NCBI GenBank assembly: GCA_038087875.1
Contig: CM075977.1
Coordinates: 268,150,001 to 268,214,000 of the forward strand
Direction: 5' to 3'
Origin: Malacoraja senta
Lineage: Eukaryota
Length of the DNA stretch: 64,000 nucleotides
Below, one piece after another: positions 15,014-56,453 of this stretch; within the stretch, counting starts at the first letter, position 1; the number at the start of each line of letters is the position of its first letter. The position numbers and the translations under genes are program-made. The notes beneath the pieces are model-generated. The model worked only from the letters and a program-made list of their open reading frames with translations. It was not told the origin of the DNA and searched no databases.

Positions 15014-16044
15014 ATTAACAATCAGTACAGGAACACCTCAAGGCTGTGTGCTCAACCCCCTGCTGTACTCACTCTATACTCATGACTGTGTAGCCGGACA
15101 CAGTGCGAACACCATCTTCAAGTTCACCGACGACACCACCGCCGTTGGACGAATTACAGATGTTGATGAGTAAGAGTATAGAAGTGAGATCAAGTGAGAT
15201 CAACCGATTGACCAAATGGTTGCCAGCACAACAATCTGGCTCTCAATATCAGTAAAACCCCAAAGACGTACAGGTTTGTAGGTTAATTGGCTTGATGTAA
15301 GTGTAAATTGTCCCAAGTGTGGGTAGGATAGTGCTAATGTGCAGGGATCGCTGTTTGGTGCGGACCTGGGTGGCCGAAGGGCCTGTATCTCTAAACTTAT
15401 CTAAAAGGCATTATCCACGTGGAATGGTTGTGCACGTTGGATGTATTGTTATGAATGGATGAGGGCTGAGTCTGATTACATCCACATAAGTAAACGTTGG
15501 TGAGAACCTACCAACATACTGCTTATAAGTCTGCCTGCCCACCATAAATTCTGCAGGTTGGCAGGAAGGAAATGCAGGAAACATTTTCCATTCATTGCAA
15601 CTTTCTGTTTGAATCTAATTTCTAACCAGGCACTCAAGGTATTTGCTGGAATTCGCCAGGATCTTCTTTTAGATATTCAGATTGAGGTCCAATCCTAATA
15701 TTAATGACTGCTGTTTCAAGTATAGGGTGCAGGTGGGTAATACTTACATTGAGTGATTTAATTCAAGATGCAACTCATTTAAGAGCATATCAAATATTGT
15801 TCTTCTCAGCCTCCAATAAGAAACACTGAATATTCTCAATGCTGAAATTTAAGGGGTAATTTTGTCATGAGTTTCAGCTGGCTTCCCAATGTCCTATAAA
15901 CATTGCCATCTTTAAGCCTGCCATATGTACTCTTCATAAACCCAGGCCTCCCCCACATTAACATGGAGATTGGAGTATTCTAATCTGTGATATTGGAAAT
16001 ATTATGCTGGTGATCAAGCAAACATCAACAGATCAACACCTATT

Positions 16045-16420
16045 AGGTAGACACAAAATGCTGGAATAACTCAGCGGGACAGGCAGCATCTCTGGAGAGA
16101 AGGAATGGGTGACGTTTCGGGTCAAGACCCTTCCTCGTCGGAGAGAGGAGGAGAACTTCTTCAAAGTAGACATACTCTGAGGAGATTTCACAGTGGAGTG
16201 GACAATGTGTGTAGGAAAGAACAGCAAATGCTGGTTTAAATCAAAGGTTAACACAAAATGCTGGAGTAACTCAGCGGGACAGGCAGCATCACTGGAAAGG
16301 TCGCGACCTGAAACGTTACCCATTCCTTCTCTCAAGAGATGCTGCCTGTCCCACTGAGTTACTCCAGCATTTTGTGTCTACCTTCGATTTTAACCAGCAT
16401 CTGCAGTTCTTTCCTACACC
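16045..16420. repeat. Nested Penelope-end palindromic elements
   Basis: Two forward arms ACACAAAATGCTGGA(G/A)TAACTCAGCGGGACAGGCAGCATC and one reverse arm at 16320-16420. Confidence 0.8.
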
Positions 16421-16559
16421 TATCAACATCTACAGTATTAGTAGTTCAGTCTAGATTCCGCTGTGTCATTTGCAGAAGCAAATAAGATATATTGCTGTCA
16501 ACAGAATTTCCTTTATTTAAGGCATTAACTCTTAACTAAATCTAGCCACATCATGCAAT

Positions 16560-16760
16560 GTGTAGATAGACACAAAATGCTGGAGTAACTCAGCAGGATA
16601 GGCAGCATCTTTGGAGAGAAGGAATGGGTGACATTTTCAGTCTGATCCGAAACGTCACCCATTCCTTCTCTGCAGAGATGCTGCTTAACCCACTGAGTTA
16701 CTCTGGCATTTTGTGTCTCTCTTCAGTTTAAACAAGCATCTGCAGTTCCTTCCTACACAC
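16560..16760. repeat. Penelope-end palindromic element
   Basis: About 70-bp inverted arms around CAGTCTGATCCGAAACGTC. Confidence 0.8.
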
Positions 16761-18884
16761 ACCTCCTCATACAATGTGTAGGTACCTTTGCACTTCCCTA
16801 CGCTACACCGCTTACTTTTAAATTGGACATAAACTCATACGGACAAATTAGCTATGTACATATAATGTTATATAATAAGTTAGATATTTACATATGTAAT
16901 TATCGGTCACAATGGGACTGGCCTCCCTTTCTTTAACCTCTCTGATTCTCTCAACTGCAAATATGCATTAGTTATCCATGTATTACAATAATAAACTAAT
17001 ACAATATCAGTACCAATATCAATCGGGGCAAGTCATTCATCCTCCCCATTACATGCTGGATGATATGGGGACATTTGTATTCCTCATCTAATCACTGTTA
17101 TTTCTGCGCTGGGAACCACAGAACCACAGAAAATGGAGTTGGCCGCTACTGTACCAATTTCCCATTTTTTAATGTCTTACATAGTTTCTTATTTATCAAA
17201 GCTTGTTGTGGTCTCAAATAATCTTGGTCACCCGTAACTTATTTAGTTAAAACAAATGTCTGTACAAACTCATTCTATTGATTTCATTTTTTATATTCCT
17301 AGGTCTACTGAAGTACAGTAACTAAACTATTTCTGCATAGCTGTGAACCAACAAAGCTTTGAAATGAGAATTCATCGTGTTGTCTTACTCTGCACCCTTT
17401 TCAGAGCTTCATTTTCTCTTAATACTGTATCACAAGCTATTCTTTGACAACTGGTATGATAAAAGGAAATGTTACAGTTGAAGTATACCATACAGAATAT
17501 AATGATCTGTCACATTAGTTCGGATCTTTTAATCAGTTCCAGGTGATAAATCAGGATGAATTGAATAGGATGGATATTGCCCTAAAAATGTATTCCCTTA
17601 TAAACAGGAATGCTGAACCTGTGCTGTGTGTGAGCAACCTTGGCCTAATTATATCCATGCATCTGGGACACTACGTTTCCATCGTCCTCTGGAAAATAGG
17701 TATGTTTAAATACAGACAGCTTTGTTAATCTGTGGTTAATGATAATTTGTGCTCCAAGATTGTGTTGTCACTGATGACAGTGCTCCTGCCCTTGAAGAGC
17801 TGTCTCCTTCAAACCACATTGCAGGAAAGTGTTTCTGGTGTGCTGATTTGAAATTACTCCTGAGTTGATTTAAATGAGATCCAAGTCATGAAATCTGACT
17901 GAAGCATCTGAGCAGGAATGTGTAATAGGAGGATTCTATGGTGGGCTAGGGTGAACTGAAATCCCGTCAGGCATTGCCTCTCTGATTAAATATGTTAGAA
18001 ATGCCCAAGGTTACTGAGGCACTACTGGACACAGGGGTGCGACCCATATTTCAGCAATATGAATCCACATTTCCTTGTTGATGAGGTGGAGAGGAAGAGT
18101 TACATATTCTGTACCAAGGAACCAGCAAGTCCCCGTGTGGCAAGATGAAATAAAGGTGATAGGAGATGTCCAGTGCATCAAAGTCAAGAAGTGACATGGT
18201 GGTGTAGCGGTAGACTTGCTGCTTTACAGCGCTTGCAGCATCAGGGTTCAATAATTGTAAGTTGTCCCTCGGGTATGTAGGATAATGTTAATGCGCAGGG
18301 AACGCTGGTCGGCACGGAGTCGGTGGGCCGAAGGGCCTGTTTCTGCATTGTATCTCTAAAACTCTAAAAAAAAAATAATAATAATAAAAGTGAGTCTATT
18401 CGTTCTGGGAACACTGGGAACAACTGGGAACTTGAATGGAAGTCTACGAGCTGACTTGCTTTGTCAAGGTGAGTGTTCTGATGCTTCAAGTCAAAGCGGC
18501 TTTGTGGTTGACAAGGTGCCGCAAGCATCTCTGCCCCTCCCCATCACGGCACATAGCCAGCAAAAAGGGAGAGCTCTGTGAATAAATTTATAGGTTGCAG
18601 TATTTTCCAATACAATTATTTTCCATGTGGGAAATTCAATGTTTGGCATTTTGTTCCCACTTGCACAAGTTTCTTTTTGCCATGTTCATCCTTGGGAGTC
18701 AGGGTAAAAAGGTAGAAGGAATTTGAGACTTGCTCGAATATTGATCGCACCAGTTTAAAACCCTACACATCAATATTTCTGGCTTTGTCAACTACTTAGT
18801 CTTTTCCTGTTCTCAGAGGAGCTCTTACTATAAAATTAGAATTTTTGAATGTCTCCTTGTAAACTATCTGCACCGATGATTAGT

Positions 18885-26607: not shown

Positions 26608-28007
26608 AGGAAGGGTAGCCAATGAAACCCCACTTTTTAAGAAAGGAGGGAGAGAGAAAATGGGAAATTATAGACCAGTTAGCCTTACATCAGTAGTGGG
26701 GAAGATGCTGGAGTCGATTGTTAAAGATGTTATAGCAGTGCATTTGGAAAACAGTGACAGGATCGGTCAAAGTCAGCATGGATTTAAAAAGGGGAAATCA
26801 TGCTTGACTAATCTTTTGAATTTTTTTGAGGATGTAACATGTGGAATGGATAAGGGAGAGCCAGTGGATGTGGTGTATCTGGACTTTCAAAAAGCCTTTG
26901 ACAAGGTCCCACACAAGAAATTGACATGGATAGAGAACTGGTTGGCTGACAGGAAGCAAAGAGTAGGAATTAACGGGTCCTTTTCAGAATGGCAGGCAGT
27001 GACTAGTGGGGTGCCGCAAGGCTCGGTGCTAGGACCCCAGTTATTTACAATATATATTAACGATTTAGACGAGGGAATTAAATGTGACATCTCCAAATTT
27101 GCAGATGATACAAAGTGTGAGCTGCGATGAGGATGCTATGAGGCTGCAGGGTGACTTGGATAGGTTGGGTGAGTGGGCAGATGCATGGCAGATGCAGTAT
27201 AATGTGGAAAAAGAAAGTGGTTATCCACTTTGGTGGCAAGAACAGGAAGGCAGATTATTATCTGAACGATGTCAGATTAGGAAAAGGGGAGGTGCAACGA
27301 GACCTGGATGTGCTTGTACATCAGTCACTGAAAGTAAGCATGCAGGTAGAGCAGGCAGTGAAGAAAGCTAAAGGCATGTTGGCCTTCATTGCGAGAGGAT
27401 TTGTGTTTAGGAGCAAGGAGGTCCTACTGCAGTTGTACAGGGGCCTGGTGAGACCGCACCTGAGGTATTGTGTGGTCTCCTAATTTGAGGAAGGACATTA
27501 TTGCTATTGAGGGAGTGCTGCGTAGGTTCACCAGGTTAATTCTCGGAATGGCGGGACTGACATATGATGAAAGAATGGGTCGACTGGGCTTGTATTCACT
27601 GGAATTTAGAAGGATGAGAGAGGATCTATTAGAAACATATAACATTCTTAAAGGATTGGACAGGCTAGATGCAGGAAAAATGTTCCTGATGTTGGGTGAA
27701 TCTAGAACCAGGGGTCACAGTTTAAGAATAATGGGTGGGCCATTTAGGACTGAGATGAGGAAAAACTTCTTCACCCAGAGAGTTGTGAATCTGTGGAATT
27801 CTCTGCCACAGAAGGAAGTGGAGGCCAATTCACTGGATGTATTCAAGAAAGAGTTAGATATAGCTCTTGGGGCTAAAGGAGACAAGGGATATAGGGAAAA
27901 AAGCAGGATCGGGGCACTGATTTTAGACGATGAGCCATGATCATATTGAATGGCGGTACTGGCTCGAACGGCCGAATGGCCTACTCCTGCACCTAATTTT
28001 CTCTGTT
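26608..28007 (+). mobile_element. CR1 LINE, 5'-truncated, frameshifted RT
   Basis: ORFs 26585-27130 NYRPVSLTS...[13 protein letters not shown]...[10 protein letters not shown]...KFADDTK, 27151-27483 and 27470-27940; CR1 3'UTR. Confidence 0.95.
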
Positions 28008-28009
28008 TA

Positions 28010-28510
28010 CACTGAAGATAGACTCAAAATGCTGTAGCAACTAAAAGGGTCAGGCAGCATTTCTTGAGAAAAGGAACAGCTGTACTAGGATTAGGAAAAG
28101 GCCAGACAAATCAGGGCCAGTAACAGATGACCAAGGAAGGGTGGAGCCCATAATGGCCCATTGTTTGTTGGGGAAGAGGTGGTAACAAAGGGATGCAGGT
28201 ATGTGAACAATGGAGCCAGTAGGATGACTAGGGTGGGGGGAGAGAGGTAATGCAGGGGTTACTTGAATTTAGAGAAATCAATGTTCATAACGCTGGGTTG
28301 TAAGCTGCCCAAGCGAAATATGAGGTGCAGTTTCTCCAATTTGTGTGTTGCCTCACTCTGACAGTGGAAGAGGCCCAGGACAGAAAGGTCAGTGTGGGAA
28401 TGGGAAGGGGAGTTAAAATATTTGGCAACTGGGAGATCGCGTAGGCCAAAGTGGATTGAGGGTAAGCGTTCAGCGACACGATCGCCCAATCTGCGCTTGG
28501 TCTCGCCGAA
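28010..28510 (-). mobile_element. Penelope 3' fragment (GIY-YIG C-terminus)
   Basis: ORF 28259-28489 LGDRVAER...DLPVAKYFNSPSH...HLIFRLGSLQP. Confidence 0.85.
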
Positions 28511-29188
28511 ATTAAGAGCGGAACCATGGGAAACAGAGGGAGCTACAAGATTCTCTGGATACTCTGTATCCTGTAGTTCTGCTCTTGCTCCCCCCCCCCC
28601 ATCACAACAGGGACAGTCACCTTAGTCCTCACCTTTCATCCCATCAGCCGTGCATACAACACATCATCCACTGACATTTTTGCCACCTCCATCGGGATCC
28701 AACAACTAGTCACATCTTCCCAACATCCACCCCTTTCAGCTTTTTGCAGAGACCATTCCCTCTGCAATTATGTAGGATGCTGGTTTAGACTGAAGATAGA
28801 AACAAAATGCTGAGTAAAAGCCCTGTCTCACTGTGCGAGCTGACCCACGAGGTACCCCGAGTGAAAGACTCATCGAAGTGTACGAGATTCCAAGTGTATG
28901 ATCAAGAGTTTAACCGAGTTCCCACGGGTATGACTAAGTTTGCCGTTTACTTGTCATTTCTGCGATGTTCCAAGTTTGTCTCCCGAGTTACCAAGTTCCT
29001 CTCCCGAGTTACTCTTGAGCCAACCTTGAATGAAGGTCTGTTTTAATAAGCAACAGTGTTAAAGAAGACATCTCCATCCTGCGGCTTTGAGTTAAAATAG
29101 AATTCAGCGCGGCCGCATCTATTGATATGACCTACAAAGGGAAAATGCGCACCGTCCAGTGCAGTTATACTTATGATTTGTTTGAAAC

Positions 29189-29570
29189 AATAGCAGTGAG
29201 GAAGAAGCATTCTCACGTCTACACCAGTGACAAACCGTACAACTGTAAAGTAAGAGGCTGCGACAAGTCATACACTCACCCTAGTTCTCTTCGCAAACAC
29301 ATGAAAGTTCACTGCAAATCTCCTCCCCCTCCCGTTAGCTCAGGCTATGAGCTTTCAAACACATCCCTGGGGATGGTGTCCTCAGACGCAGAGACAGTCA
29401 GGGGCCGCACTGCCAGCGTGTCCTCGCAAGTAACTAACCTCAACGAATGGTACATCTGTCAGGGAAGCGGGGCGGCCAACAGCCTGCACGCACCTTCCAA
29501 CAATGGCACCTCGTCCGACACCGAGGATGAGGAAGTTTACACGAACTCTGATCCCAGAACTATGCTCTGA
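29189..29570 (+). pseudogene. zic5: Truncated last coding exon of a Zic4/Zic5-group C2H2 zinc-finger gene (tail most like Zic5)
   Basis: [44 protein letters not shown]...[12 protein letters not shown]...TEDEEVY; lacks the first half of ZF4; 2-nt deletion in NSSDR (AAT AGC AGT GA-- GG); ZF4 His ligand CAC>TAC at 29220. Paralog (zic5 vs zic4/zic6) not certain. Confidence 0.85.
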
Positions 29571-30960
29571 CATAGGTGCGTTGGAGAAGTGTGCAAGTGG
29601 GCAAGAGTCAACGCAGGGTTAGTGGCAATGGAGCCCATCAACTAAAGGCAGCTAGGATGTCCAATGATGACCATCTTACACCAGCTAGATTCAAACCTCG
29701 TAGGAAAGGAATTTAAGGGCTAAGTATCGGTTCTTAGGCAACATTTTGGCCTCCGTGTCAGTCAGAATTATTGTGTGTACTTCGAGGTAAAAGAGAATCG
29801 CTATCTCATTTACTTTCAGACTATAGATATTGATTTTCTGAAATCAGACGTGACTTAAATAAATAAAACATATCATCAGACCCATTTCGGACTGGCAATA
29901 GAATCTTCGACCCACGAGAAACACCTCGCTTCTTGGAAGTGATACATACATAGCCGATCTTTGCTTACTCCCAAATTAGAGACCATTGTCCGAAAGAAGG
30001 GAAATTCTACAATTCTGTGAAATATTCATGACTCCAATCCCTGGAGGGAATCAAAACGGCCATAGCCTTGTGTTCAGTGAAATGACACAGTGCCACTACG
30101 TTCGGCAACGAAGCACAAGTGACATTCTATTTACACATCCCTAACATACAAAGCTGAATTCGGACTTTCCTGCTATATGTGAAAAGAGTCTTCTATCAGT
30201 AAGAGTGAAACTCACAAGGACTCTATTTGACCCTGAAATCAGAATCGACAATATCTCAACCCTTAAATCCAAGAGCTCTAGGATTCTTTTGTGTGATCTT
30301 CTGTCCGTCATGGTAAAGTCAAAAATCGCATATTTTACACATAATTATTCAGGCCTTCAGACAAACAAACTAAAGAGCACTAATATGTCCTTAGAGGCCA
30401 GAAGATGCAAAAATGACAGGCCTGTCCCTGTAGGATTTGTACATCATTGTTGTGGGCAGCAAGTCGTTGATGTAATCGTTAGCTATCTTAAGATTTTGTC
30501 CAGAAATGCTCTTTTATTTGTAAACTATAATTTATTTGCTGATGTGTCATATCTTTCTGCGATAGTACAGACACACCAAAGAATTATATTATTACGTTTG
30601 TTGCGGTATTGTGGTGTTTATGAATCTGTGGTTTCGTCAGACAATTTAATTTTTGATTAATTGAATGAAATGTAAAATGTGAAAAGTAAAATATGTGATT
30701 GTTTATTTCCACTCAGTGGTGGTTAATCGTTGTAACTACAGTATTGGTCCATGTTATGATCATGATGCATGTTGCAGCCATCTTGTATTTCCCTTGCATT
30801 GACAAACGCCACCCAGAACTCCTGATTGAAAAAAAATGCAACAAAGACAGTTCCTTTATTGAAATGAATGGTCCACGTGTACTTTGTGTTTCAGTGAAAG
30901 AGGTTAAACCGTGTGACAGTGTATTTTCCAATTGTGAATAAAGAGATATTGTTTTTCCTC
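29571..30960 (+). other. Zic 3'UTR with polyadenylation signal
   Basis: Repeat-free 1.4 kb after the stop codon; AU-rich block at 30510-30545; AATAAA at 30937-30942 followed by a T/GT-rich tract; no poly(A) tail. Confidence 0.65.
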
Positions 30961-31765
30961 TGTTTTAATAATCGTATTCCATATTAAATGTCTAAATCCT
31001 AACAAAATGTCAAAACGTGATTTTTTTTGCGGGGTCTGCGGATGTAGCAACACTCAACTCGATCTTTGATAGTGAAGAATCGAGTAATCTCAGCCAATGA
31101 TGGAAAGCCAGATGATTTCAGGCCCCGGGAGTGAGTTTTATGTTTATATGTTTATTGTTGCACAAGGACCTCTGCCTCTGTGCAAATATTTACCTGTTCA
31201 ATGGCAGAATGGGAGACATGTAAGAGGCAGGTTGAAGAAGCTACCTGGATACAATTGGCAGCCGGATGTAAAACAGTTCACAATATTATCTGTAATCGTT
31301 ATTTGAAAACGACATAAAAAAGGCAAGCAGAAAAGTCACATTTGTTTTCGGAAATCAAAATATTCTGGAGTCCAAAATTGCAGGGAAACTGGGAGATATA
31401 TTGGTTGAGGCAAAATCAAGATTTAACGAAGATTCCCGATTTACAAATCCGGTCGCAGTACATGAATATACCGAACTGTTTTAATATCTCCACATTCAGT
31501 TGTAACCTCGCCCCACAAATGTTACACTTGATGATTTACATTTTATTGCACGGTCGCCCCCCGCAGCGCACAAAACCAAAATGCAGCATCAAAAACAATG
31601 CGGCAAAATACATCGTTTCCGCAATTCAATTTCTGATTGTCACAGTTCTAGATATGATGACGTTTTTCAAAATTCATCATCCGTCTCAGAGGAACTGAAT
31701 TTGTCTTAAAAGGATCATAATGGATATTTAAATTATTATCGTCGACTTTATGTACGTTATGGATG

Positions 31766-32777
31766 TAGCAATGTTACAAAATTTTGAGATTTAAAAAATA
31801 AAGTCTGCAATTTATCCCATCAGATAAAGCATAAACAGAAGTTTAATTTGACACCCAATTCACTTTCATATCTTCAGTATTAAAAATATTATGGACATTT
31901 TCATACTCGGAAATTAGCATCTTGTTCCCTATTGCTTTTCCATTGACTTAACACAAAAGCTGTGATCGAGGACAGTCAAAAGCCCATAACTTTCTTAAAA
32001 ATTAAGAGAACTGAAATAAATTTTCAATTATAGATTGAAGCATTCTGAAACAAATATGAAACAATCTTACTTAGATGACATGAAATTAAAGCATATAATT
32101 AGTTAGTTACCTAATTGTAGCTAATTACAAAATTCAATTACTAGATCTAAACATCTATCAATTTCTTAAGAATAGATTAACATTTTTAAATGGCATAAGT
32201 GTCCAAATAACATTCACACAATAATTCACAATATAACATAATTTTTAAATCTCATTGTCATGAATTTACAGGCCAAATGGAAGGAATTAAATTAAATCAT
32301 CTTGTGAGTGAGGATTTCTGGAACGCGATCTTTTGGAACGTTGCTTTGCGGTGAATTTAACCCCGTATTGGCATGAAAATTATTGCCGTTAGTTCGGGGG
32401 AAAAAATCACCGTGTCGCATGTAAAAATGTGAATTAAAGGCCTCTTAAGGAGAAGGTTTATACATAAAAATAAACAACTTTCGTTTACCTGTCCCGTGTG
32501 TGAAATCCGTCCCCGTTGTTGGCGTTGACGGCTTCAGAAGATGATTTTAAAATGATTCCAACGCTGAACTTGTCGGGAGATTTTTAAAACAAAATACTCA
32601 AAACGCCCCTCGGAACGATTCTTCCGCAAAAGCTTGTACTCCAACAAAATATAATTCAGGACAACGTAGGAGAAACCCACGTTTTAACCCCGCCCGCCCC
32701 TTAAAGGCGCCAAAATCGCGCACACGGCCAGTGACAGAATTACAGTGCCGCTGAAGGCAAGTATTGTAACATACCTA
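31766..32777. mobile_element. Non-autonomous TIR DNA transposon with 7-bp TSD
   Basis: Termini TAGCAATGTTACAA...TTGTAACATACCTA; ATGGATG duplicated at 31759-31765 and 32778-32784. Confidence 0.75.
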
Positions 32778-34774
32778 ATGGATGGTATATCCCATGTACC
32801 GCTGATCGCGCGCTTCAGGGTCACCTTGTGAAGGTGGATATCATACCACCTAAAAGCGCTGGAGTTACACAAAGACACAGCAGAAATTTGGAAATGTCAT
32901 CCCATCACACATTCCTTCTCTCCAGAGATGCTGCCTGCCCGCTGAGTTAAAGAGTTCCCACGGTAGACTCACGAGTCACTAAGGTAAACGCACGGGCCAC
33001 TACGTTCTTACAACGTGTTTAAATGTTTCAAATTTTAACCTCAAGAGTACATTTTACTAGTGGAAAAGTTTAAACATGTTTTAACTTTTTCAAGAGTTAA
33101 CAAGTTTCACGGGTACCTGCCGTTAGCGCCAAGAGTCGCTAAGTTGCGTCCACGAGTTTCGACGTTCCTGCTACGTTAATTGTACGTGATTACCATGAGT
33201 TAAATTTGTTTTAAACTCGTGGTACCTCGTGGGTCACCTCGCACAGTGAGACAAGGGTTTTACTCCAGCATTTTGTGTGTATTCTCTCTGTAACTCCCTG
33301 GTTAACTCATCTCTTCCCACTCAAACCACCCACTCCCCAGGAACTTTCCCCTGCAACCACAGAATTGCAACACCTGTCCCTATGCCTCCTCCCTTAACTC
33401 AATCTAGGGACCCCAACAGTTCTTTCAGGTTAGGTTAACTTGCAACTCCTCCAACCTCATCTACTCTATCCATTGATCTCGCTGTGGACTGCTAAATATC
33501 AGTGAGACCAAGTGCAGACTGGGCGATAGTTTTGCTGAACACTTACACTCAGTCCACTTTGGCCTACACGATCTCCTGATTGCCAAACATTTTAACTCCC
33601 CTTCTCATTCCCACACTGACCTTTCTGTCCTGGGCCACTGTCAGAATGAGGCCACATGCAAATTGGAGGAAAAGCACCTCATATTTTGCTTGGCCCCCTC
33701 TACTTTCAGTCTAAAAAAGGGTTCTGACCCAGAACGGCACTTGTTTCTTTTCTCCAGAGGTGCTGCTGACCTGCTGAATTGCTCCAGCACTTTGTGTCTA
33801 TGCTGTCCTTTGTGTCTATGCTATGGAAAGCAAAACTAAAAATAACCTCAACACACACTTTTCAGGAGTTAAGTTAGCAAACAATTCGATCTGAAAAGCA
33901 TGGCAGAAATTTGGAGAACTCTTCCATAATTACGTCTTGTCAAATGTTGCTAATTTCAGATTTGTGGCTGAAAGCTGTTCGCTAACCAAAGATATTAAGT
34001 TTGAGTCACAAACCAGTGTTCATAGTGAAAGGTGAAAGGTGTACATACACAAGGATATAAATGGCACGCACATTCATGGTCTTGTGTTCCCATTGAAATA
34101 AGTAAACCATTATTGAATAGATTTTTACAATGTGGACATTTTGGAATTGCTTGCTTACTTGAATTAATTAATGTTCTTCAAATATTTCAGTACTTCATGA
34201 AAGTGGCTTAATCAATCAGTAAGGTTAATTAAGAATGGAAACATTTTGAAGCATACATATATATTTTGATGTAGATAGTTAATTACTAAATTCGACAATG
34301 CAGCAAACCTAGTCCCTGACTACTAAGAAATAAATATTTGATACAAGTTATTGCCCAAAACAGGAGAATATTAGTTTTAAATATATGCAGGGATTTTTGA
34401 AATTCAAATTGGGGTGGGGGGTCAATATGAATTTTCAATAATTCTTATTCCCTTACATATTTTATACTGTATGTGTTGACTATATAAGAGGAGGGCATGA
34501 TCTTAGGGGTGGAGGAGATGGAATGATAGAAATGGCAAACCGATGGAGGTATTAGAACATCTTGATGAGACTTAAAATGGAGATAGAAGACGAACCGAGC
34601 TGATAAGCCAGTGCTTCCTTGCGTTTCAATAAAGATCTGTTCTGTTTCTCTTGTCTAAAGACAAGTCAATTATGCTCCGTTTTAAAAATAAATTGGCATG
34701 AACTTGCTCCATGACTGCTGAATATTAATGAAAGTTTAACAGTATAAAGCGCTGGAATGTAGACTTGTTCAGCA

Positions 34775-55786: not shown

Positions 55787-56453
55787 TGGGCCTGTTCCAC
55801 TTAGGTAATTATTTTTGGTGACTGTCGGCGACTTTCACAGTCATAGCAGGTCACCGAAAAAGCGACGACTGGACCCCCCTTATGACAATGTCTACGACAA
55901 CCTACCACCTAGTCGACGTCAAGCTACGGCAAGCTACGGACAACCAGCGACCCAATCGTCGTGACTTAGGACGTCCACCTACGACCACCCCTACAACAAC
56001 CTATGACCACACAGACGACAACCTACGACAACCGAAGTCAGCCTACGTCCACCCGCGACAAGCTACAACAAGCAACGACCCTGTCAGCGACAACTGAAGA
56101 CAACTGAAAACAATTCAGTCACCGGTACCTGTCGCTGGTTGACGTAGGTCGATGTAGGTAATCGCCAATGGAATTCACCAAAGTCAGCACCCGGCGACAA
56201 CCTACGTCACCTGGCGACAACCTATGTCATCCTGGCGACAACCTACAACAGGAGAAGACAAGCTACGTCAAGCCCACAGTCGCCGAAAAGTTTTGAACAT
56301 TTCAAAATCCAACGGCGACTAGAAAAATATTACGACTCTTTAGGCGACCTGAGGAGACTACTCATAACCATACAGGTGTCACCCCGCGACCATGTGAAAA
56401 CTGCCTTGTCGCCTGTAGTCGCTGAAAAAAATCACCTAAGTGGGTTAGGGGCA
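55787..56453. mobile_element. PIF/Harbinger MITE
   Basis: TAA duplicated (55784-55786, 56454-56456); TIR TGGGCCTGTTCCACTTAGGT / ACCTAAGTGGGTTAGGGGCA; internal CGACAACCTAC repeats. Confidence 0.85.

What the first reader, a model, noticed from the sequence alone, without database searches (positions are those of the whole stretch)
28768..33280. Zic (Zic5-like) exon and 3'UTR captured inside a TIR-bounded 4.5-kb insertion: candidate Pack-Harbinger element in a cartilaginous fish
Seen: (i) a Penelope fragment is cut in two and its halves rejoin across 28767/33281 with a 13-bp duplication (11/13, both differences C/T), so 28768-33280 is an insertion; (ii) just inside are 45-bp inverted repeats (41/45) next to TAA/TTA, like the Harbinger MITE at 55787; (iii) between them lie about 3.7 kb that include the end of ZF4, ZF5, the C-terminal tail, the 3'UTR, AATAAA and further sequence with no poly(A). 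Known: Zic4/5 last exons begin at GEKPF, and vertebrate Zic genes are compact head-to-head pairs. Neither exon 1 nor a partner gene is visible in the 29 kb upstream. Inference: DNA-level capture of a developmental transcription-factor gene end by or between Harbinger ends, not a retrocopy. Caveat: the flanks are TAA vs TTA, not an identical TSD, so capture by repair between two separate MITEs is an alternative.
Basis: partly seen in the sequence, partly recalled or inferred. Interest (0 to 1): 0.85.

Follow-up and report, generated by a model that had tools for sequence, protein, structure and literature searches.

The report
Decayed transposon copy carrying Zic5 fragment

Summary
The sequence features are real, but the boundaries were drawn wrongly.

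- **Penelope split:** a Penelope copy is split at 28767/33281 with a true 13-bp duplication. That duplication belongs to a roughly 190-bp foldback (hairpin) repeat, whose arm pieces abut both ends of the insert.
- **Two separate insertions:** two Harbinger-like elements then landed at the mirror-image TAA/TTA of the hairpin's two arms.
  - On the right is a 310-bp element (32950-33259) with its own perfect TTA duplication.
  - On the left is an element whose end starts at 28818 and carries the Zic cargo.
- **Cargo size:** only 29188-31765 (2.58 kb, not 3.7 kb) is Zic-derived. It runs from mid-ZF4 through ZF5, the tail and the stop codon to about 0.8 kb past AATAAA.
- **Paralog and donor:** it is Zic5-type. 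Related skates hold the intact last exon (GEKPF start) at 97% identity.
- **Right of the cargo:** 31766-32898 is unrelated high-copy repeat. No right end of the cargo element is found.
- **Copy number:** the transposon/Zic junction occurs only in runs of one organism. There it has 10-25 times the depth of the lowest-depth contigs laid on the same stretch, and its sequence looks like a family consensus.

The scan already found this family on other DNA of the same genome (s1-140097). My verdict is a degraded member of a multicopy Pack-type family carrying a dead passenger.

The parts
28520..28767 (+). Left half of the target Penelope copy. Its last 13 bases (28755-28767) are the left copy of the target-site duplication.
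   Evidence: Colinear with Penelope copy 10836-10729. The reading frame ends in SLCN (read).
28768..28817 (+). Outer part of the left arm of a foldback (hairpin) repeat, ending in GAGTAA. TAA at 28815-28817 is the target triplet of the cargo element.
   Evidence: Aligns with the left arms of foldback copies 16195-16440 and 16540-16795 up to GGAGTAA. Also matches 16401-16359 and 16740-16698.
28818..29187 (+). Left arm of the cargo-bearing Harbinger-like element. It comprises a terminal inverted repeat (about 50 nt) and 320 nt of high-copy transposon sequence.
   Evidence: The first 50 nt are 88-90% complementary to 33208-33259. Positions 28874-29045 are weakly homologous to the inside of the 310-bp element. 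Summed contig depth is 6e4-6e5 in organism A.
29188..31765 (+). Zic5-derived cargo. It holds the last-exon part from mid-ZF4 (frame from 29199), ZF5, the C-terminal tail, the stop at 29568-29570, the 3'UTR with AATAAA at 30937-30942, and about 820 nt more.
   Evidence: 97.0% identical to L001:703-1642, which holds the intact exon. Contigs of 4.8-6 kb from three other skates match only 29199-31764 and run on unlike for at least 1.7 kb upstream in all three, and for 1.7 kb downstream in two (one contig ends after 447 nt). The tree places it with ZIC5.
31766..32292 (.). Two fragments of a very high-copy repeat (about 31766-32030 and 32031-32292). They are not Zic and not seen in the donor contigs.
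   Evidence: Summed depth is 1-4.5 million in all DNA runs, and the repeat is present in RNA runs. Loose ends at 31766, 32027-32031 and 32288-32292 mark the fragment borders.
32293..32898 (.). Another repeat, high-copy mainly in organism A. It has no significant similarity to the transposon arm or the 310-bp element.
   Evidence: Depth is 5.6-7e5 in X1 against 4e4-2.6e5 in X3. Alignments to the arm and to the 310-bp element do not exceed shuffles.
32899..32949 (-). Inner part of the right arm of the same foldback repeat, ending in GAGTTA.
   Evidence: Joined to 33263 onward it aligns without a break to the right arms of two foldback copies. Other copies continue into the hairpin loop before 32903 (loose ends).
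32950..33259 (+). Separate 310-bp Harbinger-like element with an exact TTA/TTA target duplication.
   Evidence: TTA at 32947-32949 and 33260-33262. Removing 32950-33262 restores the hairpin arm. Its depth profile across species matches that of 28843-29023. Its own left end is not a clear inverted copy of its right end.
33260..33280 (-). Outer part of the right foldback arm, truncated after GTGTGT.
33281..33693 (+). Right half of the Penelope copy. Bases 33281-33293 are the right copy of the 13-bp duplication.
   Evidence: Colinear with 10734-10310.

Best explanation
The locus is a nest of four events.

1. A foldback (hairpin) repeat of about 190 bp inserted into a Penelope copy and made the 13-bp duplication.
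2. A 310-bp Harbinger-like element inserted at the TTA of the hairpin's right arm.
3. A member of a gene-fragment-carrying ('Pack-type') Harbinger-like family inserted at the mirror TAA of the left arm. Its cargo is 2.58 kb of the 3' end of Zic5, copied as DNA from mid-ZF4 to about 0.8 kb beyond the poly(A) signal.
4. The right arm of that copy, together with the inner left arm and loop of the hairpin, was lost. About 1.1 kb of other repeat fragments now stands in its place.

Because the hairpin is a palindrome, two independent insertions at the same triplet look like one TIR-bounded element.

The capture itself happened elsewhere and earlier, in one skate lineage. After that the chimeric element was amplified to roughly 10-25 copies. 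The Zic piece is a dead passenger: ZF4 is cut in half, a zinc-binding His is now Tyr, there is a 2-bp deletion at its 5' edge, and this copy's private changes are mostly non-synonymous.

**Shown:** the anatomy, the cargo limits, donor-type exons in relatives, and the restriction of the junction to one organism's runs.
**Inferred:** the copy number, arrival by transposition, and the order of events.
For: **Target duplication and the foldback**
- The 13-bp duplication and Penelope colinearity are shown.
- The foldback pieces abut both ends of the insert and reconstitute a hairpin arm once 32950-33262 is removed.

**Cargo limits and paralog**
- L001 holds the intact exon, with the acceptor followed by GEKPF. 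It matches the window only from 29188, at 97.0%.
- Contigs X3, X4 and X8 match only 29199-31764 and are unlike on both sides.
- The piece groups with ZIC5 with 97/98 support. The window branch is 0.041 against 0.007 for the intact exon.

**Multicopy family**
- X2 contig 25 covers 29161-29601 across the junction. It has T29220 together with T29231, a combination found in neither the window copy nor the donor.
- Zic-part contigs have depth 90-105 in X2 and 490-920 in X1. The lowest contigs in the same tables have depth 3-10 and 25-47.
- The contigs are short and fragmented in A, but 5-6 kb in the other species.
- At 26 of 27 differences between A and the window, A carries the letter of at least one other skate species. 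That fits a family consensus compared with one decayed copy.
- Junction words 29158-29230 are held 4/4 by X1 and X2 only.
- Earlier notes of this scan report the same cargo in a 3.4-kb element on another piece, with 20-30 copies.

**Decay of the coding part**
- His to Tyr at 29220, plus four non-synonymous private changes against one synonymous.
Against: - The copy number rests on contig depths of runs whose library type is unknown.
- The right arm of the family was not seen, so 'lost right end' is inferred from the absence of a second inverted end in 31700-32950.
- The 310-bp element lacks a clear left TIR, so the family's Harbinger nature rests on TAA/TTA triplets and one type of end. No transposase was examined.
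- The donor locus in this very genome was not seen.
- Assembly of 31765-32900 was not checked with long reads.
Confidence: 0.67

Rival explanations
1. One 4.4-kb Pack-Harbinger element (28818-33259), bounded by the two inverted ends, carries about 3.7 kb of Zic locus.
For: The ends are 88-90% complementary and sit next to TAA and TTA.
Against: - The flanking triplets differ (TAA against TTA).
- The right end is paired with an exact TTA 310 bp to its left, inside a continuous hairpin arm.
- The flanks of the two ends are mirror images of each other rather than a continuation of one target.
- 1.1 kb of the supposed cargo is unrelated high-copy repeat.
Confidence: 0.05
2. Local, transposition-independent capture. 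A break between two resident elements in this hairpin was repaired by copying the Zic5 end, giving a single-copy gap-filling Pack-TIR as in Tan et al. 2021. This locus would then be the only copy, or the birthplace of the family.
For: - Most animal Pack-TIRs are single-copy and arise this way (PMC8277862).
- The patchwork of truncated repeats right of the cargo looks like filler DNA.
Against: - The junction contigs in organism A have 10-25 times the depth of the lowest contigs laid on the same stretch, and they carry a haplotype that is neither the window's nor the donor's.
- The 26:1 polarity of differences does not fit a single locus.
- Earlier notes list the cargo on other pieces of this genome.
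Confidence: 0.08
3. This is the same multicopy family, but this copy arrived by break repair rather than by transposase. A break in the fragile hairpin was healed by copying from another family copy, primed by homology in the foldback or the transposon end, with template switches into other repeats.
For: - Only one transposon end is present.
- The hairpin's inner left arm and loop are deleted.
- Three truncated repeat fragments without duplications follow the cargo.
Against: - The left end sits exactly at the TAA that the 310-bp element also used in mirror image, as expected for transposase-made insertions.
- Later deletion explains the rest equally well. Tan et al. note that multicopy Pack-TIR copies quickly lose a flanking element on one side.
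Confidence: 0.15
4. It is a 5'-truncated processed retrocopy of Zic5 mRNA that landed in repeats.
For: - The piece starts inside the last exon and contains no intron.
- A 13-bp duplication flanks the whole insert.
Against: - The 13-bp duplication flanks the foldback, not the Zic piece.
- There is no A-tail at 31765.
- The piece runs about 820 nt past AATAAA, and the only RNA contig found (organism E) covers 30621-30913.
- The 5' junction to transposon sequence is shared by the whole family.
Confidence: 0.03
5. It is the genuine Zic5 last exon of this species, in a locus invaded by repeats.
For: There is an AG-ended stretch just upstream (29180-29193) and an open frame to a normal stop.
Against: - It lies inside an insertion in a Penelope copy.
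- The upstream 21 codons of the exon and 700 nt of intron present in L001 are nowhere in the 64 kb.
- ZF4 is broken.
- No Zic exon 1 or partner gene is present.
Confidence: 0.02

Closest known systems
Pack-TIR elements of animals (Tan et al. 2021, Nat Commun, PMC8277862) and Pack-MULEs or Pack-CACTA of plants
   Same: A non-autonomous terminal-inverted-repeat DNA transposon with host gene sequence inside it. The sequence was copied at the DNA level, is a gene fragment, and is usually non-functional. As that paper notes for a multicopy frog family, copies soon lose an element on one side.
   Different: - In that survey only 4 of 370 animal Pack-TIRs were multicopy; the copy counts it gives are three for one frog case and five for another. 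The median captured size was 224 bp, and 87% were hAT or Tc/Mariner.
- Here the cargo is 2.58 kb, the vehicle is Harbinger-like, and the depth suggests about 10-25 copies.
- This particular copy is one-ended.
PIF/Harbinger MITEs (TWA target duplication)
   Same: The 310-bp element has an exact TTA/TTA duplication, and the cargo element's end abuts TAA. The ends share a short core (CCTGT..CACT) with the Harbinger-type MITE at 55787.
   Different: - No transposase or Myb-like partner gene was examined.
- The 310-bp element has only one recognisable end.
- The family differs from the MITE at 55787.
Vertebrate ZIC5 last exon
   Same: It groups with named ZIC5 proteins. It has the [22 protein letters not shown] finger and the QVTNLNEWY...EDEE tail.
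   Different: - It starts in the middle of ZF4.
- His is changed to Tyr in ZF4, and Val to Ile in NEWYV.
- There are no upstream exons.

Membership tests
Pack-TIR (gene-fragment-carrying DNA transposon) | Non-transposon host sequence with an identifiable parental gene | tested here: met
   29188-31765 is 97% identical to intact Zic5 last-exon loci of related skates.
Pack-TIR (gene-fragment-carrying DNA transposon) | Host sequence flanked on both sides by the two ends of one TIR element, with one target duplication | tested here: not met
For this copy there is only a left end at 28818 next to TAA. No right end is found in 31700-32950. The inverted end at 33259 belongs to a separate 310-bp insertion.
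Pack-TIR (gene-fragment-carrying DNA transposon) | Multicopy: the same cargo junction at several loci | tested here: inconclusive
   Supported by the depth ratio of 10-25, a third haplotype and consensus-like polarity. No second locus was read directly.
PIF/Harbinger superfamily | 3-bp TWA target-site duplication | tested here: met
   The 310-bp element has TTA/TTA. The cargo copy has TAA on its one preserved side.
PIF/Harbinger superfamily | Terminal inverted repeats on one element | tested here: inconclusive
   The cargo copy has one end only. The two ends of the 310-bp element are not clearly complementary: score 13 against a null mean of 8.5, reached by 3.5% of shuffles.
PIF/Harbinger superfamily | Autonomous partner encoding a DDE transposase and a Myb-like protein | not tested
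   Not searched. None was noticed in the ORF list of the window.
ZIC5 orthology group | Groups with ZIC5 rather than ZIC4 in a tree of the last-exon product | tested here: met
   The clade with named ZIC5 proteins has 97/98 support.
Processed retrocopy | Ends at the mRNA poly(A) site with an A-tail and has its own target duplication | tested here: not met
   There is no A-run at 31765. The piece extends 820 nt past AATAAA. The 13-bp duplication flanks the foldback instead.

The most novel reading that the evidence does not exclude
A Harbinger-type element that picked up 2.6 kb of Zic5 has amplified to about 20 copies in a single skate lineage. That would be the largest and most amplified Pack-TIR family known in an animal. 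The family may home to one TAA inside an abundant hairpin repeat. Its many copies of the Zic5 3'UTR, or the 147-codon chimeric frame at 29127-29570, might feed back on Zic5 regulation as small-RNA sources, as microRNA decoys, or through a ZF5-only peptide.
Probability: 0.07. Interest if true: 0.8.

Novelty: new member of a known kind. Interest (0 to 1): 0.55.

Why it matters
Gene-fragment capture by DNA transposons is a major source of new gene structures in plants. In animals it is thought to be rare, small and almost always single-copy. A multicopy family with a 2.6-kb piece of a developmental transcription-factor gene in a cartilaginous fish would extend that picture. It would also give a natural system for asking how such chimeras arise and spread.

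For this window, the practical lesson is about annotation:
- Insertions at mirror sites of a palindromic repeat can mimic a single TIR-bounded element.
- A target duplication can belong to the innermost host repeat rather than to the conspicuous cargo.
- The stray Zic5 exon should not be annotated as a gene.

Tried and rejected
- **Hammerhead ribozyme in the foldback unit.** I suspected a Penelope-tail hammerhead. Rfam gave no hammerhead hit in 27500-34500 or 15900-16900, only sub-threshold hairpin-type matches, so I call it a foldback repeat only.
- **Further copies through proteins.** The Zic frame and a 3'UTR frame of the window are not on record as exact products. The homology search returned only the intact-exon ORF P0001 from older skate runs.
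- **The 6-kb contig carrying P0001.** It could not be fetched because the file was too large.
- **RNA runs.** X15 and X16 covered only the repeats. X19 gave a single 3'UTR contig, so the mRNA 3' end is only weakly placed.
- **A right end for the cargo copy.** Local alignment of the left arm in both orientations against 31700-32950 found nothing above chance.
- **Organism A's contigs as an orthologous single copy in a sister species.** Rejected because of the 26:1 polarity of differences.
- **Organism A's contigs as the donor only.** Rejected because contig 25 carries the transposon junction.
- **The right 13-mer as part of the foldback arm.** It resembles the arm loosely, but the Penelope alignment and reading frame (SLCN twice) explain it fully.
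Full report
**1. What is in the sequence**

The region 28400-33700 was read directly and compared with itself and the rest of the window.

The flanks are a Penelope-type retroelement. 28654-28762 and 33283-33693 are colinear with another copy at 10836-10310 on the minus strand. In a base-by-base alignment, both 28755-28767 and 33281-33293 cover the same 13 bases of that reference copy. They also share two differences from it.

**2. What owns that duplication**

The sequence just inside both ends is not transposon end. It consists of pieces of an abundant foldback repeat of about 190 bp.
- Complete hairpin copies lie at 16195-16440 and 16540-16795.
- 28768-28817 aligns with the left arm up to GGAGTAA.
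- 32899-32949, joined to 33263 onward, aligns without a break to the right arm.

The insert in the Penelope copy is therefore a foldback element, and everything else is nested in it. Rfam finds no hammerhead or other curated RNA in it.

**3. The inverted ends**

But about 20 nt of each arm is the foldback flank.

The right end closes a 310-bp unit, 32950-33259. This unit is flanked by TTA on both sides, and removing it restores the hairpin arm. The left end (from 28818) abuts the mirror TAA of the other arm.

Because the target is a palindrome, two independent insertions at the same triplet imitate one bounded element. That explains why the flanking triplets are TAA and TTA.

Other points about the two elements:
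- They belong to one family by end sequence, by weak internal homology and by the same depth profile across species.
- Their ends differ by 10%, whereas the cargo copy differs from its own family by only about 1.4%. The two ends are therefore not a recent duplicate of each other.
- The 310-bp unit has no convincing left inverted end.

**4. The Zic piece**

*Identity.* Translation from 29199 gives [14 protein letters not shown]..., then ZF5, the tail and the stop at 29568-29570. An exhaustive profile search finds one close relative, P0001. P0001 is an ORF call on Logan contigs of older skate runs.

*Intact exon in a relative.* Its contig L001 holds the intact last exon: a pyrimidine tract, AG, then [25 protein letters not shown]. 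L001 matches the window only from 29188 onward, at 97.0% over 940 nt. The 'W' after TML in P0001 is a TGA read as Trp by the gene caller. L001 has the stop.

*Paralog.* A tree puts the window piece and P0001 with named ZIC5 proteins (97/98 support). The window branch is six times longer than that of the intact exon.

*Decay.* Relative to L001, the window copy has:
- a 2-bp deletion and a CpG transition at the 5' edge;
- His to Tyr at the last zinc ligand of ZF4;
- twelve coding differences in all.

*Rest of the window.* No other Zic-like segment exists in the 64 kb.

**5. Limits of the cargo**

Contigs of three other skate species (X3, X4, X8; 4.8-6 kb) match only 29199-31764, with about 3% differences. 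Upstream they continue as unlike sequence for at least 1.7 kb in all three. Downstream they do so for 1.7 kb in X4 and X8, while the X3 contig ends after 447 nt. The Zic-derived stretch is therefore 2.58 kb.

The rest breaks down as follows:
- 31766-32292 is made of two fragments of an extremely abundant repeat that is also present in RNA runs.
- 32293-32898 is another repeat, abundant mainly in organism A.
- No second inverted end of the cargo element occurs in 31700-32950.

The evidence for copying at the DNA level:
- AATAAA lies at 30937-30942.
- The one RNA contig found covers 30621-30913.
- There is no A-tail at 31765.
- The piece runs about 0.8 kb past the likely mRNA end.

**6. One copy or many**

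In the two runs of organism A:
- The Zic part is covered by short contigs of depth 490-920 (X1) and 90-105 (X2).
- The lowest-depth contigs in the same tables have depth 25-47 and 3-10.
- In the other species the same stretch is one long contig at the lowest depth of the run.

Contig 25 of X2 spans the transposon/Zic junction (29161-29601). It combines T29220 with T29231. Neither the window copy nor the donor type has that combination, so at least one further junction-bearing copy exists.

Of the 27 differences between A's contigs and the window, 26 have A agreeing with at least one of the other species. That is expected if A's contigs are a family consensus and the window holds one decayed member. 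It is not expected for an orthologous neutral copy.

Words spanning the junction are held by organism A's runs only, 4 of 4. Of this copy's five private coding changes, four are non-synonymous.

My estimate is 10-25 copies. It rests on depths from runs of unknown library type and is therefore provisional.

**7. Earlier findings of the scan**

Earlier notes on other pieces of this same genome describe a 3.4-kb 'Pack-Harbinger' with ZIC5 cargo, and a follow-up estimating 20-30 copies (s1-140097). Further Zic-cargo notes are s1-140336, s1-141395 and s1-141466.

So the scan found this family before on other DNA. I used those notes as a lead. My depth, haplotype and polarity evidence agrees with them independently, but I did not see another copy directly.

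**8. Mechanism**

*Most likely (about 0.65-0.7).* Capture of the Zic5 end by a Harbinger-like non-autonomous element happened once in this lineage. The chimera was then amplified. One copy inserted at the TAA of this hairpin. It later lost its right arm along with the hairpin's inner left arm and loop, and repeat fragments now fill the gap.

*A variant (0.15).* This copy was laid down by break repair of the fragile hairpin, using another family copy as template.

These are listed under rival explanations.

**9. Comparison with what is known**

Tan et al. 2021 (PMC8277862) found 370 Pack-TIRs in 100 animal genomes:
- 87% were hAT or Tc/Mariner.
- The median captured size was 224 bp.
- Only four were multicopy. 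The copy counts given are three for one frog case and five for another, and copies were already losing a flanking element.

The present family is of that kind. It differs in having a Harbinger-like vehicle, a tenfold larger cargo and, if the depth estimate holds, several-fold more copies.

This particular copy fails the two-ended criterion. It is best filed as a degraded member.

**10. Limits**

- The library types of X1 and X2 are unknown.
- Contigs drop rare variants.
- The donor locus of this genome, the family's right arm and the assembly of 31765-32900 were not seen.

Noticed in passing
window 16195-16440 and 16540-16795 (also 28005-28076 and 33696-33801): An abundant foldback repeat of about 190 bp with roughly 85-nt arms. 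The copy at 16566-16767 is flanked by 14-nt direct repeats (16552-16565 and 16768-16781, 13/14), and the copy at our locus by 13 nt. In each, one arm is shortened at the outer end. This suggests a retroposon-like insertion mode for a hairpin element. The 14-mer partly overlaps the element's own GTGTAG terminus, so its length is uncertain.
   Followed up: partly
window 31766-32292: This repeat has a summed contig depth of 1-4.5 million in every skate DNA run and is clearly present in RNA runs, yet it has no second copy anywhere in this 64-kb window. It may be clustered or satellite-like rather than dispersed.
   Followed up: no
window 28309-28516 versus 33492-33693: A 208-nt inverted pair (85-87%) of the Penelope GIY-YIG end. 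The left flank holds an inverted, truncated Penelope fragment that butts against the plus-strand Penelope copy near 28517-28520.
   Followed up: no
window 29127-29570: A 147-codon open frame starts at an ATG in transposon sequence and reads into the Zic5 frame, giving a broken ZF4, ZF5 and the tail. No exact product is on record, and no RNA evidence was found.
   Followed up: partly
L001:392-1162 (protein P0001): The public ORF call reads the Zic5 stop codon TGA as Trp and runs 25 codons into the 3'UTR. It also starts in the intron. P0001 is a gene-caller artefact, not a protein.
   Followed up: yes
window 28843-29187 and 32950-33259: This Harbinger-like family is 10-20 times more abundant by summed depth in organisms A and B than in organisms C and E. 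That points to recent lineage-specific expansion.
   Followed up: no
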